DNA of 64,000 nt, from the IMG/VR virus record IMGVR_UViG_3300035156_000206, positions 227,968 through 291,967 of that record; one strand, given 5' to 3'. A program made the position numbers and the translations under genes. Below are positions 5,005 to 42,853 of the stretch, piece by piece; position 1 is the stretch's first letter; the number at the start of each line of letters is the position of its first letter. The notes beneath the pieces are model-generated. The model did not search any database. It was not told the DNA's origin and saw only the letters and a program-made list of their open reading frames with translations.

Positions 5005-5649
5005 TCAGATCGAGTCAAACTTGGCATCGGACATGCGCTGGAAGTGACCGCTAACTGCACGGTAGATTGCTTCTGCCAGTTCGGTGACCAGATCTGCAAC
5101 GATGAACCAGATGACCGAGATTGGCCAGTAAGCGATCCAGATCACGATCGATCCTTTGTTCGTGCTCGCTTGTGGAGCCACCAGCTTCAGCAGTTCCGAC
5201 ATCTTGGTGATATCTGCCCAGTTGGTCCCACGTGGAGCACCATACTTGATTTCTTTGACAAATGATGCCAGCATTTCAGCATCTGCTGAGTGAGCCTTGA
5301 AGTAGTCCAATGGCAGATTCTTCTGCCTCAGGAACGCTGCGCGCGAAGCAACAAACGCTTCGGCCTTCTTGGTCAGAAAGTTTGACCACTTGTATCGTGC
5401 CCAAAGTACCCCAATCACGGCATACAGTACGAGGGCGCCGGCCACGTAGAGTGGATTGGTGATGAAGTCGATGACTACTGGGAACTTTGCGGCAATGGCC
5501 ACGCCCAGTGCGATGGTGGCAATTGTTGCCCAACCTCCGCGTTCGTGGACAACGAAACACCAGAGAATGATCGTGATGATTGCCAATGGCACCCAGAAAA
5601 TTGGGAGTAAGGCAAGTAGTGCCAAATCTGCGAAAAGGGATGTGATCAT
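5005..5649 (-). CDS. membrane protein in Ter cluster
   Basis: Several hydrophobic helices; start at 5649 after AGGA. Confidence 0.7.
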   Translation of the reverse strand: MITSLFADLALLALLPIFWVPLAIITIILWCFVVHERGGWATIATIALGVAIAAKFPVVIDFITNPLYVAGALVLYAVIGVLWARYKWSNFLTKKAEAFVASRAAFLRQKNLPLDYFKAHSADAEMLASFVKEIKYGAPRGTNWADITKMSELLKLVAPQASTNKGSIVIWIAYWPISVIWFIVADLVTELAEAIYRAVSGHFQRMSDAKFDSI

Positions 5650-35181: not shown

Positions 35182-35255
35182 TGGGTTGAGAGACGGGAAT
35201 CGAACCCGCGCTACTTCCGTCACAAGGAAGGGCTCTACCATTGAGCTACTCCCAA
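35182..35255 (-). tRNA. tRNA-His(GTG)
   Basis: Loop TTGTGAC, C discriminator plus CCA. Confidence 0.9.
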
Positions 35256-37240: not shown

Positions 37241-37315
37241 TGGTGCCGCTAATTGGTATCGAACCAATCTCCCTGGGGTTTCAGGCCAGTGCTAATCCAT
37301 CTCAGCTACAGCGGC
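37241..37315 (-). tRNA. tRNA-Phe(GAA)
   Basis: Loop CTGAAAC, ACCA end. Confidence 0.88.
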
Positions 37316-38784: not shown

Positions 38785-38867
38785 TGGTGCCCCCGCAGAG
38801 ACTCGAACTCTGAAAGGCGCGGCTTCTGAGGCCGCTAGCTGTACCAATTTGCATTAGCCACAGGGGC
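38785..38867 (-). tRNA. tRNA-Leu(CAG) with short variable loop and enlarged D loop
   Basis: Loop CTCAGAA, ACCA end. Confidence 0.85.
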
Positions 38868-39052: not shown

Positions 39053-39219
39053 TCGTCGTCATCCTCGTACTGACGATACTCATCTTGAGCACATTCATAA
39101 CCTTGCCAGTTATCAACACCAGCATTGCGCAGACAGTTTAGGAACAGACTGTCGTCATACAACTTTTCATACTCTGCCACAGACATCGTGACCACATCAT
39201 CTTTAATTTCAATAGCCAT
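39049..39219 (-). CDS. 56-aa acidic phage protein (not in ORF track)
   Basis: MAIEIKDDVV...AGVDNWQGYECAQ; GAAGG RBS. Confidence 0.7.
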   Translation of the reverse strand: MAIEIKDDVVTMSVAEYEKLYDDSLFLNCLRNAGVDNWQGYECAQDEYRQYEDDDE

Positions 39220-39234
39220 TTGCTACCTTCATTA

Positions 39235-39321
39235 TGGTGCGAGTAGAGGGACTCGAACCCCCACGATATTCCTACCGCCAGGACCTAAACCTGGTGCGTC
39301 TACCAATTTCGCCATACTCGC
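39235..39321 (-). tRNA. tRNA-Leu(TAG)
   Basis: Loop TTTAGGT, long variable arm, ACCA end. Confidence 0.93.
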
Positions 39322-39341
39322 ATGCTTCAAACAACAAAATC

Positions 39342-39450
39342 TGGGGGGAGTGAGGGGAGTCGAACCCCATGATGGAACGTCATGCCTGGACAACCCGACG
39401 CCTGGTGGTGTCCCCATCTTCCCGCATACTGAGCCCGCACTGCACTCCCC
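39342..39450 (-). ncRNA. tRNA-like RNA with 8-bp acceptor stem and no anticodon loop
   Basis: GGGGAGTG/CACTCCCC, T loop GGGG-TTCGACT-CCCC. Confidence 0.55.
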
Positions 39451-39459
39451 ATTGTTACA

Positions 39460-39606
39460 TTTGTAGCAACCGGTACTGATCTCCGGTTTGTCCCCAAGCC
39501 GTATGAGGCCGCTTACAAGGGGTTCGGGCATTACGTAGAACAAGGTGGCCACACCTACGCAACCTCTTTTATGTTCCCGCGCATCAGTCTGCGCATTTGC
39601 TACAAA
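39460..39606 (-). ncRNA. 147-nt stem-closed ncRNA
   Basis: TTTGTAGCAA/TTGCTACAAA closing stem with four internal hairpins. Confidence 0.55.
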
Positions 39607-39609
39607 ATC

Positions 39610-39780
39610 TTCGCTTTAGGCTTTCACCTACCCTGGCCTTGAGGCTGCGTATGAAGAGTACCGATCCATGCCGATACCTCCGAGCAATCGCTAAGTTGAT
39701 TCACTCTTCGGTTTCCCGAACGCTGATCAAGCGCTGCCTAGAAGGGCCGTATAATAATTTACAACCCCACGTACAATTGC
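39610..39780 (-). ncRNA. putative structured ncRNA
   Basis: TCGG-GAAA-CCGA, GAAGAGT/ACTCTTC, TAGG-TGAAAG-CCTA. Confidence 0.4.
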
Positions 39781-39785
39781 GAAAC

Positions 39786-39915
39786 TGGTGCCGGCGGCTG
39801 GAATCGAACCCGCAAGAACTGCTTTTCACACAGTCTCATCACCCTGAGCATCAACTGGGACTAGTACTCCAGTCTATCTCTTATCGATGCTACCCTTTTG
39901 CATGGGGCGTCCGGC
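39786..39915 (-). ncRNA. tRNA-ended RNA with enlarged interior
   Basis: GCCGG/CCGGC-A-CCA, TTCGATT T loop, AGCATCGA/TTGATGCT arm. Confidence 0.55.
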
Positions 39916-39921
39916 ATATCT

Positions 39922-39999
39922 TGGTGGATGCGAAGGGAATCGAACCCTCATGCCCCGCTACTACCGTTTGTCCAGGATGACCTAGGCGGGAGCGCACCC
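39922..39999 (-). ncRNA. tRNA-like RNA without canonical D or anticodon arms
   Basis: GGGTGCG/CGCATCC-A-CCA, GAGGG-TTCGATT-CCCTT, CCCGC/GCGGG. Confidence 0.55.
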
Positions 40000-40006
40000 A
40001 ATGTTA

Positions 40007-40082
40007 TGGTGGAGGATGCCGGGATCGAACCGGCCACCTGATGCTTGCAAAGCACCCGCTCTCCCAAATGAGCTAATCCCCC
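40007..40082 (-). tRNA. tRNA-Ala(TGC)
   Basis: Loop TTTGCAA, G3-U70 pair, ACCA end. Confidence 0.95.
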
Positions 40083-40087
40083 AAATT

Positions 40088-40366
40088 CTATACTACTTGA
40101 ATCTTTACCTTCTTGATCTCGATCGTGTCGAGTGCCTTAAGCTGTTCATCAAGGGAAGCAAGTTTTTCTTTCTTTTGTGCTCGTGAAAAGAAGCTACTCT
40201 TCGTTTCCACCAGCTTTTTCTTCTCGTACTCGAGGTTGCTACGAACCTGATTGATGTTTCGTACCACTGATGGTCTGTGAGCGTACAACTTATCAGGCGC
40301 AGTCCACATGTTCAGAATCGAACCATCAGGGAAAACCCCAACATACATCTCGTCATCAATATTCAA
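40088..40366 (-). CDS. hypothetical coiled-coil protein
   Basis: TTG start after GGAG. Confidence 0.65.
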   Translation of the reverse strand: MNIDDEMYVGVFPDGSILNMWTAPDKLYAHRPSVVRNINQVRSNLEYEKKKLVETKSSFFSRAQKKEKLASLDEQLKALDTIEIKKVKIQVV

Positions 40367-40399
40367 GGTCTTCTCCAAGTTCTTAATGAGACATCCTAT

Positions 40400-40477
40400 C
40401 GAACAAAGAGGAATCGAACCTCTTGAGCCCAACCGCGGATGTGGAGAACGTACCCAACTGCTTCCGTTACTTTGCTC
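40400..40477 (-). pseudogene. degenerate tRNA
   Basis: AGAGG-TTCGATT-CCTCT T arm and GAGCAA/TTGTTC stem only. Confidence 0.4.
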
Positions 40478-40588
40478 TCTTCCTAGGTGCTTCCGGCGAT
40501 ATTGAAGTCTCGGCCGGTACCAGCCTTCCTTCTCGACGTGCCATCTTCAATCTAGTCGCCCAGTGTTTCACGTTAAGGGTGTCTCATT

Positions 40589-40789: not shown

Positions 40790-40868
40790 TGTGAGACCAG
40801 GCGGGATTCGAACCCACGGCCCTCCGCCATCACTGGCGGTGCTCATCCCACTCGAGCTCACCGGTCCC
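40790..40868 (-). ncRNA. tRNA body whose anticodon loop is a GNRA tetraloop
   Basis: Normal D and T arms, 8-bp acceptor stem, CCGCCA-GTGA-TGGCGG. Confidence 0.65.
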
Positions 40869-40879
40869 CCATTATTCTT

Positions 40880-40955
40880 TGGAGGGGCGGGGTGGAATCG
40901 AACCACCGACCTCCTGGATTAACCCTGGCGCTCTCTCCCCCGAGCTTGCCGCCCC
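40880..40955 (-). tRNA. non-canonical tRNA with 6-nt anticodon loop GTTAAT
   Basis: GGGGCGG/CCGCCCC-T-CCA, D and T arms intact; identity not assignable. Confidence 0.5.
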
Positions 40956-41272: not shown

Positions 41273-41348
41273 TGGGTGCGTCCCCGAGGAGTTGAACCTC
41301 GCTTAAGCTCTCTATACGTAGCCTGCCCTAGCACTAGACGAAAGACGC
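41273..41348 (-). ncRNA. Glu-type tRNA body with 10-nt anticodon loop
   Basis: D arm GTCTAGTGCTAGG as in the neighbouring tRNA; loop ACGTATAGAG. Confidence 0.5.
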
Positions 41349-42778: not shown

Positions 42779-42853
42779 TGGTAGGGCCGGAGGAGCTCGA
42801 ATCCTCTTTTGCTGGTTAAAAGCCAGCTACTTCACCGTTAAAGTTTCAACCCC
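42779..42853 (-). tRNA. tRNA-Lys(TTT)
   Basis: Loop CTTTTAA, ACCA end. Confidence 0.92.

What the first reader, a model, noticed from the sequence alone, without database searches (positions are those of the whole stretch)
39342..39999. Cluster of three tRNA-ended RNAs with non-tRNA interiors
39342-39450, 39786-39915 and 39922-39999 each keep the acceptor stem, a TTCGA T loop and (in two) ACCA, but replace the D and anticodon arms with unrelated hairpins. Conserving only the top half, which RNase P, CCA enzyme and EF-Tu recognise, suggests tRNA-like processing used to mature novel RNAs, or elbow/acceptor decoys.
Basis: partly seen in the sequence, partly recalled or inferred. Interest (0 to 1): 0.6.

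Follow-up and report, generated by a model that had tools for sequence, protein, structure and literature searches.

The report
tRNA-derived acceptor-end RNAs in phage array
Three tRNA-gene derivatives in a jumbo phage's tRNA array keep the tRNA top half: two have lost the decoding half and one is a tRNA-Phe-like copy split by a 57-base insertion, which resembles long-known but unexplained phage RNAs, and I found no evidence yet that they are expressed or conserved.

Summary
On the minus strand, E1 (39450-39342), E2 (39915-39786) and E3 (39999-39922) sit as regular units in the tRNA array of a 292-kb phage from a biocrust metagenome.

- **E1 and E3:** both have a perfect acceptor stem, T arm and encoded CCA. 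Their interiors show no trace of tRNA. A scan for this top half finds 28 sites in the genome against 0.1 per shuffled genome.
- **E2:** this one is different. Removing 57 nt after base 7 leaves a tRNA-Phe(GAA) cloverleaf. Its acceptor stem and T stem are damaged.
- **Identity marks:** E3 carries the alanine marks (G3:U70, A73). E1 carries the histidine marks (G-1:C73). E2 carries the threonine acceptor set.

No tRNA or Rfam model calls any of the three. E3's weak tmRNA match is no better than the matches of ordinary tRNAs.

I found no homologues. In one close freshwater relative the E3+E2 segment is replaced while the flanks stay 96-100% identical. No RNA data exist.

Best reading (about 0.4): processed, non-decoding acceptor-end mimics. 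Decaying tRNA genes and processing signals remain live rivals.

The closest known cases are T4 RNA C and the TLD-only mini-tmRNAs of phages. I rate it a new variant of a known kind.

The parts
39342..39450 (-). E1: 109-nt tRNA-ended RNA gene. It has no recognisable D or anticodon arm.
   Evidence: Sequence; fold. Not called by ARAGORN or Rfam. Found by the top-half scan. No hidden tRNA.
39443..39450 (-). E1 5' acceptor strand GGGGAGUG (G-1 plus positions 1-7).
   Evidence: Pairs 8/8 with 39345-39352. G-1:C73 is the bacterial His acceptor mark (PMC9976931).
39353..39369 (-). E1 T arm UGGGG-UUCGACU-CCCCU.
39342..39352 (-). E1 3' acceptor strand CACUCCC, discriminator C73 and encoded CCA.
39786..39915 (-). 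E2: 130-nt tRNA-Phe(GAA)-like gene with a 57-nt insertion and a Thr-type acceptor stem.
39852..39908 (-). E2 insertion (E2 nt 8-64). It folds into its own hairpins.
   Evidence: Deleting it gives an ARAGORN tRNA-Phe(GAA); shuffled-interior controls gave 0 calls. The hairpin shows in the MFE fold.
39818..39848 (-). E2 D arm (stem CUCA/UGAG) and anticodon arm ACUGU-GUGAAAA-GCAGU. The anticodon GAA lies at 39825-39827.
39786..39813 (-). E2 T arm GCGGG-UUCGAUU-CCAGC (with a G.A mismatch), 3' acceptor strand CGCCGGC and ACCA.
   Evidence: It is 95% identical over 21 nt to the T arm of the phage's own tmRNA. It resembles tRNA-Thr(UGU) 3' ends of abundant bacteria in the reads (table 5c).
39922..39999 (-). 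E3: 78-nt tRNA-sized RNA gene with an Ala-type acceptor stem and T arm. One irregular hairpin replaces the D and anticodon arms.
39993..39999 (-). E3 5' acceptor strand GGGUGCG (G3 pairs with U70).
   Evidence: The same acceptor stem occurs in a Terracidiphilus tRNA-Ala(UGC) and in phage TLD-only RNAs.
39950..39992 (-). E3 interior (43 nt): stem CCCGC/GCGGG, hairpin CUAGG-UCAU-CCUGG and a 13-nt bulge ACAAACGGUAGUA.
   Evidence: MFE and centroid folds. No similarity to tRNA interiors.
39922..39949 (-). E3 T arm GAGGG-UUCGAUU-CCCUU, 3' acceptor strand CGCAUCC, A73 and CCA.
39451..39785 (-). 335-nt non-coding spacer between E2 and E1. This is context: its ends would be set by processing of E2 and E1.
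   Evidence: No gene is called here. No Rfam match. Fold z = -1.54. The stretch 39631-39788 is 96% identical in a freshwater relative.
40007..40082 (-). Canonical tRNA-Ala(UGC), 7 nt upstream of E3 (context).
39235..39321 (-). Canonical tRNA-Leu(UAG), 20 nt downstream of E1 (context).

Best explanation
The three elements are tRNA-gene derivatives that sit as regular units in the phage's tRNA array.

**Shown**
- E1 and E3 keep an intact 12-13-bp acceptor/T minihelix with an encoded CCA, and have lost every trace of D and anticodon arms.
- E2 is a tRNA-Phe(GAA)-like cloverleaf. It has a Thr-type acceptor stem, is split by a 57-nt insertion after base 7, and has two damaged top-half pairs.

**Inferred**
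- They are transcribed with the array.
- RNase P cuts the 5' end. The supporting features are U at -1, the shared leader motif and the RCCA end.
- The 3' end is trimmed to the encoded CCA, which the phage's own CCA-adding-type enzyme could maintain.
- The products would be small RNAs of 109, 130 and 78 nt.
- E1 and E3 cannot decode. They carry the acceptor-only identity marks of the two synthetases best known to charge minihelices: HisRS (G-1:C73) and AlaRS (G3:U70, A73). They are probably charged.

**Proposed role.** They act as top-half mimics, that is, substrates or competitors for proteins that read the acceptor end. Such proteins include synthetases, EF-Tu, and host anti-phage toxins that read CCA plus the acceptor stem. 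The TLD-only mini-tmRNAs of other phages are thought to work this way, by titrating SmpB. E2 may be a decaying duplicate or an expanded member of the same set.
For: **The elements are real**
- Exact anatomy.
- Chance excluded: 28 sites in the genome against 0.1 per shuffle.

**They fit the array's grammar**
- Same strand, 6-20 nt spacing, U at -1 in all three (16/29 tRNAs; background 26%).
- The ACA[AT] leader is present in E1 and E3 (9/29 tRNAs; background 5%).
- Every T arm on the array strand between 26 and 47 kb lies in a unit that also has an acceptor stem. There are no orphan T arms.

**E1 and E3 interiors are not tRNA-like**
-. Uniform neutral decay from a tRNA would not leave the top half perfect.

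**Identity marks**
- They match the table in PMC9976931, which also reports that HisRS and AlaRS charge minihelices.
- E3's acceptor stem is identical to that of a real tRNA-Ala(UGC) and to that of phage TLD-only RNAs.

**Precedent and plausibility**
- Anticodon-less Ala-acceptor RNAs recur in phages: at least 29 distinct TLD-only sequences with covariation, plus phage DS6A (PMC4131195).
- The anti-phage toxSAS FaRel2 reads CCA plus the acceptor stem and modifies a bare minihelix; GNAT toxins read the same parts (bioRxiv 10.1101/2024.07.05.602228).
- The phage encodes a PolyA_pol/CCA-adding-type enzyme.
- T4 has a comparable RNA, rnaC, in the same kind of position, and it is expressed.
Against: **No conservation data**
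- No homologue of E1, E2, E3 or their flanking proteins turned up in IMG/VR, JGI metagenomes, cultured phages or 50 related phage records.
- In the one close relative seen, a 409-nt freshwater contig, the 218 nt holding E3+E2 are replaced by 188 nt that are under 80% alike. The flanks are 100% and 96% identical. The pair is therefore dispensable or exchangeable.

**No expression data**
- No RNA run holds the locus.

**Weak structural support**
- Folds are no more stable than shuffles.
- E2's top half, the part a mimic would need, is the damaged part.
- E3 has U4-A69 rather than the minor Ala determinant G4-C69.

**Identity marks are only suggestive**
- The chance of G-1:C73 is about 1 in 16, and the chance of G3:U70 with A73 is a few percent.

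**Signs of fast gene turnover**
- The phage holds several other degenerate tRNA-like units.
Confidence: 0.4

Rival explanations
1. Dead or dying tRNA genes. The array evolves by birth and death of tRNA genes. Insertions, deletions or recombination recently replaced or split the interiors. The top halves look intact only because the events are recent. The RNAs, if made, do nothing.
For: - E2 shows such an event directly: a 57-nt insertion plus two point defects. It is redundant with the canonical tRNA-Phe(GAA) at 37241-37315.
- A close relative has a different sequence in place of E3+E2.
- No homologues were found.
- Fold energies are ordinary.
- Many other odd tRNA-like units occur in this phage and in other large phages.
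Against: - E1 and E3 have flawless acceptor stems (8/8 and 7/7), consensus T loops and CCA, while nothing of the interior remains. This would need whole-interior replacement in two neighbouring genes without touching either end.
- E3's replaced interior has almost exactly tRNA length (43 nt against 41).
- There are no orphan T arms in the array.
- The leader motif and U at -1 are kept.
- Similar anticodon-less RNAs are clearly under selection in other phages.
Confidence: 0.3
2. Processing punctuation. The top halves are kept only as RNase P and 3'-end processing signals. These signals would cut the long array transcript and set the ends of neighbouring RNAs, such as the 335-nt spacer RNA and the small-ORF mRNAs. 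Plant mitochondrial t-elements and mascRNA work this way. The released tRNA-like pieces would be by-products.
For: - E2 and E1 bracket the 335-nt non-coding spacer exactly.
- The array is interleaved with small ORFs.
- No sigma-70-like promoter or good terminator lies within 39342-39999.
- Top-half integrity and the leader motif are what RNase P needs.
- t-elements are an established precedent (PMC1920247; title and abstract seen).
Against: - E3 and E2 follow tRNA-Ala with gaps of only 6-7 nt, where the neighbouring tRNA already supplies the cuts.
- Nothing requires Ala- or His-type identity marks for processing.
- The spacer shows no sign of being a functional RNA: no Rfam match, and z = -1.54.
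- The relative keeps the spacer but swaps E3+E2.
Confidence: 0.17
3. E3 is a TLD-only mini-tmRNA. It binds SmpB and blocks or diverts host trans-translation, as proposed for mycobacteriophage DS6A.
For: - G3:U70, A73 and CCA are present.
- The Rfam tmRNA model aligns both ends (26.6 bits).
- With my model of the phage TLD-only family, E3 is the top hit in the array (29.0 bits).
- Its 3' 26 nt are 88% identical to the phage's own tmRNA.
- The sequence AUGAGG before the T loop is shared with the 68-nt TLD-only RNA.
Against: - The D-loop analogue (GGUUUCGAC), invariant in the family, is absent.
- GGAC/GGAU before the T arm is replaced by GGCAU.
- True members score 44-83 bits and ordinary tRNAs up to 25.4, so 29.0 is near background.
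- The Rfam tmRNA model also gives 20-31 bits to ordinary tRNAs.
- The phage already has a full two-piece tmRNA and no SmpB gene.
Confidence: 0.08
4. They are working tRNAs whose extra sequence is an intron that is spliced out.
For: - E2 becomes a tRNA-Phe(GAA) when 57 nt are removed.
- Other large phages hold tRNAs with a 37-44-nt insert in the anticodon loop.
Against: - No deletion uncovers a tRNA in E1 or E3.
- E2's insert lies at position 7/8, not in the anticodon loop.
- It is far too short for a group I intron and matches no Rfam intron family.
- Bacteria have no known splicing machinery for such inserts (established knowledge).
Confidence: 0.04

Closest known systems
Phage T4 RNA C (rnaC, 'species 1' small stable RNA), with RNA D, in the T4 tRNA cluster
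   Same: - It lies in the tRNA array on the tRNA strand, packed a few bases behind a tRNA: tRNA-Arg, 1 nt, rnaD, 6 nt, rnaC.
- rnaC (139 nt) has a perfect T arm CCGGG-UUCGAAU-CCCGG closed by an acceptor-like stem, with long non-tRNA hairpins inside.
- It is expressed. Its function is still unknown (PMC3014915; PMC9697503).
- It is conserved in 740 phage records, mostly unannotated.
   Different: - There is no sequence similarity to E1-E3.
- rnaC's acceptor-like stem has two U.U mismatches and no encoded CCA, where E1 and E3 have perfect stems with CCA.
- rnaD shows no T arm.
- rnaC is conserved across a large phage group, whereas E1-E3 have no known relatives.
TLD-only mini-tmRNAs of phages (mycobacteriophage DS6A; the 62-84-nt family found here in IMG/VR)
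   Same: - These are anticodon-less RNAs of tRNA size with G3:U70, A73-CCA, a T arm, and one stub hairpin in place of the body.
- Some lie inside phage tRNA arrays, 2-3 nt from a tRNA.
- One subgroup has exactly E3's acceptor stem.
- Their proposed action is by mimicry, titrating SmpB (PMC4131195).
   Different: - E3 lacks the invariant D-loop analogue and the GGAC element.
- E3 scores 29 bits against 44-83 for members.
- E1 (His-type) and E2 (Thr acceptor, Phe anticodon) have no counterpart in that family.
Synthetic tRNA minihelices (acceptor stem + T arm) charged by AlaRS and HisRS
   Same: E1 and E3 contain the same 12-13-bp coaxial acceptor/T helix, with the marks that suffice for charging in vitro: G3:U70 with A73, and G-1:C73 (PMC9976931).
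   Different: - The minihelices are laboratory constructs.
- E1 and E3 carry 43-72 extra nt between the two strands.
- Charging has not been tested here.
t-elements of plant mitochondria and mascRNA-type tRNA-like processing signals
   Same: - These are tRNA-like top halves kept as RNase P/RNase Z signals that set the ends of neighbouring RNAs.
- The Rfam mascRNA model hits a neighbouring unit at 38789-38867 (24.9 bits, below the cut-off).
   Different: They belong to eukaryotic and organellar systems. No processing data exist here, and there is no Rfam match to E1-E3.

Membership tests
Canonical tRNA (Rfam RF00005 / ARAGORN) | 7-bp acceptor stem, T arm with UUCRANY loop, 3' NCCA | tested here: met
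   E1 and E3 meet it fully. E2 meets it with a bulge or mismatches in the acceptor stem and a G.A in the T stem.
Canonical tRNA (Rfam RF00005 / ARAGORN) | D arm and anticodon arm with a 7-nt loop; model score at or above 29 bits | tested here: not met
   - No RF00005 match is listed for E1 or E2, even at E<=10. For E3 only the tmRNA match of the same clan is listed.
- No ARAGORN call.
- No 5-bp/7-nt arm with U33 in E1 or E3 other than the T arm.
- E2 has both arms, but only after a 57-nt deletion made in silico.
tmRNA / TLD-only mini-tmRNA | G3:U70, A73, CCA | tested here: met
   E3 only.
tmRNA / TLD-only mini-tmRNA | D-loop analogue (U)GGNUUCGAC after the acceptor stem, and GGAC/GGAU before the T arm | tested here: not met
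   - Near-invariant across the 31 aligned sequences.
- E3 has only 'CU' after the acceptor stem, and GGCAU before the T arm.
- No TGGNNTCGAC occurs in the array.
tmRNA / TLD-only mini-tmRNA | Covariance-model score in the range of members | tested here: not met
   - Model R1: members 44-83 bits, E3 29.0, tRNAs up to 25.4, E1 13.0, E2 12.2.
- Rfam tmRNA: E3 26.6 bits, below the cut-off of 47. Ordinary tRNAs score 20-31 bits.
T4 rnaC-type small stable RNAs of phage tRNA clusters | Non-tRNA RNA gene packed within a phage tRNA array on the tRNA strand, with a T arm closed by an acceptor-like stem | tested here: met
T4 rnaC-type small stable RNAs of phage tRNA clusters | Sequence homology to rnaC or rnaD | tested here: not met
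   A search of 39200-40100 against 50,697 phage records matched only the two flanking tRNAs.
T4 rnaC-type small stable RNAs of phage tRNA clusters | Accumulates as a stable processed RNA during infection | not testable with these tools
   No RNA run holds the locus.
Intron-containing tRNA (group I or bulge-helix-bulge) | Insert in or next to the anticodon loop, with a self-splicing core or a BHB motif | tested here: not met
   E2's insert lies after base 7, is 57 nt long and matches no intron family. ARAGORN in intron mode finds nothing credible in E1-E3.
tRNA-Sec | 8/5 acceptor/T stems, long variable arm, UCA anticodon, G73 | tested here: not met
   E1 has an 8-bp acceptor stem, but also C73, no UCA loop and no RF01852 match.
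Aminoacylatable minihelix-type substrates (Ala, His) | Acceptor-stem identity set of the synthetase | tested here: met
   - E3: A73, G2-C71 and G3.U70 are present; G4-C69 is absent (U4-A69).
- E1: G-1 and C73 are present.
- Compared with the table in PMC9976931.
Aminoacylatable minihelix-type substrates (Ala, His) | Actual charging by AlaRS or HisRS | not testable with these tools
   Needs an aminoacylation assay.

The most novel reading that the evidence does not exclude
E1 and E3, and perhaps E2 with its Thr/Gly-type acceptor stem, are phage counter-defence RNAs. They would be chargeable, anticodon-less acceptor-end decoys that soak up host anti-phage toxins which read CCA plus the acceptor stem (toxSAS, GNAT or MenT-type enzymes). 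This would spare the real tRNAs. Exchangeable cassettes, as seen in the freshwater relative, would let a phage match the toxin specificities of its host.
Probability: 0.1. Interest if true: 0.8.

Novelty: new variant of a known kind. Interest (0 to 1): 0.45.

Why it matters
**Link to current work.** Phage tRNA arrays are now seen as part of the arms race over the host's translation machinery. Phage tRNAs are known to replace tRNAs that host defences cut.

**What would be new.** RNAs that keep only the acceptor end, with Ala- and His-type marks, would add a second tactic: mimicry of the end that synthetases and several anti-phage toxins read.

**An old open question.** The same anatomy occurs in T4 RNA C, whose role has been unknown for about 50 years. 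It also occurs in many uncalled units of other large-phage arrays. One tractable example could explain a whole overlooked class.

**A practical point.** tRNA finders and Rfam miss these units, so phage tRNA counts and the 'intergenic' gaps in arrays are misread.

Tried and rejected
**Readings rejected**
- **Chance:** shuffles give 0.1 sites per genome.
- **Protein-coding:** only spurious ORFs overlap the tRNAs, and no gene is called between 39219 and 40088.
- **A one-piece or two-piece tmRNA spanning the region:** ARAGORN finds only 'tag not identified' artefacts, and only at 80% threshold. The real two-piece tmRNA is at genome c8650-9044.
- **E3's tmRNA hit as evidence of kinship:** ordinary tRNAs score alike.
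- **Hidden tRNAs in E1 and E3:**
- **tRNA-Sec, YrlA or any other Rfam family:** no match.
- **Paralogy among E1, E2, E3, the spacer and other odd units:** only T-arm-sized matches.

**Searches for relatives that found nothing**
- Exact and gapped DNA patterns in IMG/VR and JGI metagenomes.
- Flanking proteins in IMG/VR, JGI metagenomes and the 5.8-billion-protein word search.
- BLAST against 50 related phage records.
- The ENA contig L067 and the Logan contig L068 are the same phage: L067 is identical to the window's record throughout the E1-E3 region.

**Limits and unused tools**
- No RNA runs were available.
- I did not use the large representative protein search, the structure tools or any alternative genetic code.
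Full report
**Setting**

The window is the last 64 kb of a 291,967-bp virus record. The record comes from a biocrust metagenome. It has 48% G+C and myovirus-type structural genes. Its best relatives share only about 45% protein identity in a strongly conserved gene.

ARAGORN finds 29 tRNA genes and a permuted tmRNA in the genome. Nearly all lie on the minus strand, in one array that runs over the two ends of the contig. The tmRNA is of the betaproteobacterial two-piece type: tmRNA_permuted 108 bits, beta_tmRNA 79.8 bits. The phage also has a PolyA_pol/CCA-adding-type gene, but no SmpB and no RtcB.

**The observation**

| Element | Coordinates | Length | Acceptor stem | T arm | 3' end |
|---|---|---|---|---|---|
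| E1 | 39450->39342 | 109 nt | GGGGAGUG/CACUCCCC, 8 bp | UGGGG-UUCGACU-CCCCU | CCA |
| E2 | 39915->39786 | 130 nt | GCCGG/CCGGC, then a bulged A or two mismatches | GCGGG-UUCGAUU-CCAGC (G.A mismatch) | ACCA |
| E3 | 39999->39922 | 78 nt | GGGUGCG/CGCAUCC, 7 bp | GAGGG-UUCGAUU-CCCUU | ACCA |

ARAGORN calls none of the three. Rfam gives none of them a tRNA match, even at E<=10.

My scan for a T arm plus a 7/7 acceptor stem plus NCCA finds 28 sites in the genome. Twenty dinucleotide shuffles give 0.1 on average. E1 and E3 are therefore not chance.

The elements also follow the array's layout:
- tRNA-Ala, 7 nt, E3, 6 nt, E2, 335 nt, E1, 20 nt, tRNA-Leu.
- All three have U at -1 (16 of 29 tRNAs do; background 26%).
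- E1 and E3 carry the AACAAU/AACAUU leader (an ACA[AT] leader is seen before 9 of 29 tRNAs; background 5%).

**The interiors**

For E1 and E3, three tests agree that the interior is not tRNA-like:
- The interiors are no more like the interiors of the phage's tRNAs than shuffled versions are.
- No 5-bp/7-nt arm with U33 exists other than the T arm.
- No single internal deletion produces an ARAGORN tRNA beyond what shuffled-interior controls give.

E2 is different. Removing 57 nt right after base 7 leaves a 73-nt tRNA-Phe(GAA). It has D stem CUCA/UGAG, anticodon arm ACUGU-GUGAAAA-GCAGU and a 4-nt variable loop. Three shuffled controls gave no call. E2 is therefore a tRNA-like gene split by an insertion, not a top-half-only RNA. 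The phage also has a canonical tRNA-Phe(GAA) at 37241-37315.

None of the three folds is more stable than shuffles: z = +0.83, -0.89 and -1.51.

**Identity marks**

I compared the acceptor stems with the identity table of Giege and Eriani (PMC9976931).
- **E3:** has A73, G2-C71 and G3.U70, the major Ala set. It lacks G4-C69.
- **E1:** has G-1 and C73, the bacterial His acceptor marks. The same review reports that HisRS charges mini- and microhelices bearing G-1:C73 and discusses alanylation of minihelices by AlaRS.
- **E2:** has the whole bacterial Thr acceptor set (G1-C72, C2-G71, G4-C69, G5-C68), but its anticodon arm reads GAA.

E3's acceptor stem is identical to that of a Terracidiphilus tRNA-Ala(UGC). 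These marks are suggestive only. G-1:C73 alone has about a 1 in 16 chance.

**Is E3 a tmRNA piece?**

Rfam's tmRNA model aligns both ends of E3 (26.6 bits, cut-off 47). The same model gives 20-31 bits to ordinary tRNAs, so this is not evidence of kinship.

A pattern built from E3's acceptor stem found a 68-nt RNA inside the tRNA arrays of other IMG/VR phages. It is a plain tmRNA tRNA-like domain (TLD) with a stub hairpin. A second pattern found many more. After filtering I had 29 distinct sequences of 62-84 nt. All have G3:U70, the D-loop analogue GGUUUCGAC, GGAC/GGAU before the T arm, and ACCA. Seven of ten predicted pairs show double compensatory changes.

A covariance model of this family gave these scores:

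| Sequence | Bits |
|---|---|
| Family members | 44-83 |
| The phage's own tmRNA acceptor piece | 48.5 |
| E3 | 29.0 |
| Ordinary tRNAs | up to 25.4 |

E3 lacks the D-loop analogue altogether. It shares the architecture of the family but fails its defining features.

Hudson et al. list mycobacteriophage DS6A as 'TLD only'. They cite work showing that such a molecule inhibits tmRNA, perhaps by titrating SmpB (PMC4131195).

**Relatives and expression**

Every search for homologues of E1-E3, the spacer or the flanking small proteins came back empty. The ENA and Logan contigs that carry the flanking genes are the same phage.

One piece of comparative evidence exists. A 409-nt contig from a freshwater metagenome matches tRNA-Ala at 64/64. 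It then has 188 nt that are under 80% like the window, in place of the 218 nt that hold E3+E2. It then matches 39788-39631 with 5 differences and 1 gap. The homology resumes at the CCA of E2. The E3+E2 segment is therefore an exchangeable piece bounded by tRNA-type ends.

No RNA run holds the locus, so expression is untested.

**Context in other phages**

T4 has the same layout: tRNA-Arg, 1 nt, rnaD, 6 nt, rnaC. rnaC (139 nt) has a perfect T arm closed by a 5/7 acceptor-like stem around long hairpins. It is expressed, and its role is unknown. It is conserved in 740 phage records.

The tRNA arrays of other large phages hold many uncalled top-half units of 99-194 nt. They also hold tRNAs with a 37-44-nt insert in the anticodon loop.

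In this phage, every T arm on the array strand between 26 and 47 kb lies in a unit that also has an acceptor stem. Several further odd units exist.

**Weighing the readings**

Uniform neutral decay cannot erase the interior and leave 8/8 and 7/7 acceptor pairs, a consensus T loop and CCA. For E1 and E3, either the top half is under selection, or the interiors were swapped in recent single events.

*For selection:*
- The array grammar is kept.
- There are no orphan T arms.
- The acceptor stems carry synthetase identity marks.
- Anticodon-less Ala acceptors are clearly selected in other phages.
- Anti-phage toxins such as FaRel2 read CCA plus the acceptor stem and modify a bare minihelix.

*Against selection:*
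- There are no conservation or expression data.
- The cassette is swapped in the relative.
- Fold energies are ordinary.
- E2 is visibly damaged.

My estimates for the readings:

| Reading | Confidence |
|---|---|
| Processed, non-decoding acceptor-end mimics | about 0.4 |
| Relics of tRNA gene turnover | about 0.3 |
| Processing signals | about 0.17 |
| E3 as a true TLD-only tmRNA | about 0.08 |
| Spliced tRNAs | about 0.04 |

That the three are tRNA-gene derivatives embedded in the array is close to certain.

**Verdict**

The finding is real and carefully observed, and it needs one correction (E2). It belongs to a known but unexplained kind: small tRNA-ended RNAs in phage tRNA clusters. The new features are perfect minihelices with His- and Ala-type marks and no decoding half. 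Interest is moderate until RNA and comparative data exist.

Noticed in passing
L095-L224 (IMG/VR contigs), e.g. L099:7940-8007, L152:6025-6102, L199:7437-7516: A widespread family of 62-84-nt TLD-only mini-tmRNAs occurs in phage contigs. All have G3:U70, the GGUUUCGAC D-loop analogue, a stub P2 hairpin, GGAC/GGAU before the T arm and ACCA. Covariation is strong. Only 9 of 40 lie next to a tRNA. The only precedent I found is DS6A 'TLD only' in PMC4131195..
   Followed up: yes
genome G000:C1:8650-9044 (minus strand; outside the window), locus L010: The phage encodes a two-piece (permuted) tmRNA of betaproteobacterial type with tag ANDSQFKVAAYA. This hints at a betaproteobacterial host. The phage has no SmpB gene..
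   Followed up: partly
window 39451-39785 (minus strand): A 335-nt non-coding spacer lies between E2 and E1, with no Rfam match. By my reading of the sequence it holds a 13-codon ORF (MDRYSSYAASRPG) with GGAGG 7 nt before its ATG, at about 39627-39668. The stretch 39631-39788 is 96% identical in a freshwater relative..
   Followed up: partly
window 39789-40006, compared with run X2: In a freshwater-metagenome relative, the segment holding E3+E2 (218 nt) is replaced by 188 nt of unlike sequence. The flanks are 100% and 96% identical. This looks like an exchangeable cassette bounded by tRNA-type ends. The replacing letters could not be read..
   Followed up: partly
window 38785-38867, 40790-40867, 40880-40955, 41274-41348, 40396-40562, 42779-42853 (all minus strand): These are further odd tRNA-like units.
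- 38785-38867: an 83-nt cloverleaf-like unit with loop CUCAGAA that neither tool calls.
- 40790-40867 and 40880-40955: two units with 6-nt anticodon loops. ARAGORN labels the second one '???'.
- 41274-41348: a unit ending ACCC.
- 40396-40562: a 167-nt top-half unit without CCA.
- 42779-42853: a tRNA-Lys(UUU) that only Rfam calls.

   Followed up: partly
genome G000:C1:8323-8475 (-), 5421-5618 (-), 77904-77990 (+): Three more tRNA-ended units lie outside the window.
- A 153-nt unit with a canonical class-II 5' half and an extra 50-60 nt.
- A 198-nt unit with an 8-bp acceptor stem and C73-CCA.
- A lone 87-nt unit on the plus strand with a UCU (Arg) loop.

The unit at 77904 and the unit at window 40396-40562 share 15 nt of perfect complementarity (E about 0.02-0.04)..
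   Followed up: no
window 35182-35255 (minus strand): The phage's canonical tRNA-His(GUG) has C73 but U, not G, at -1. The anticodon-less E1 does have G-1:C73..
   Followed up: no
L084:11061-11170 (IMG/VR 3300038300_000071) and other loci L083-L090: Large-phage tRNA arrays hold tRNAs with a 37-44-nt insert in the anticodon loop; one scores 51.8 bits with Rfam tRNA. They also hold many uncalled top-half units of 99-194 nt..
   Followed up: partly
genome G000:C1:72273-72635 (+): A 385-aa ORF matches PolyA_pol (PF01743, 73 bits). It is a likely CCA-adding enzyme encoded by the phage..
   Followed up: no
L094:1909-2047 (T4 rnaC): T4 RNA C has a perfect T arm and a 5/7 acceptor-like closing stem. 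It is found in 740 phage records, nearly all without annotation, and no Rfam family seems to cover it..
   Followed up: partly
L101:2064-2150 (Parvibaculum MAG): An 87-nt tRNA with anticodon UUA (which would read UAA) and a long variable arm carries the Ala-type acceptor stem GGGUGCG/CGCAUCC-ACCA. It is a possible ochre suppressor charged with alanine..
   Followed up: no
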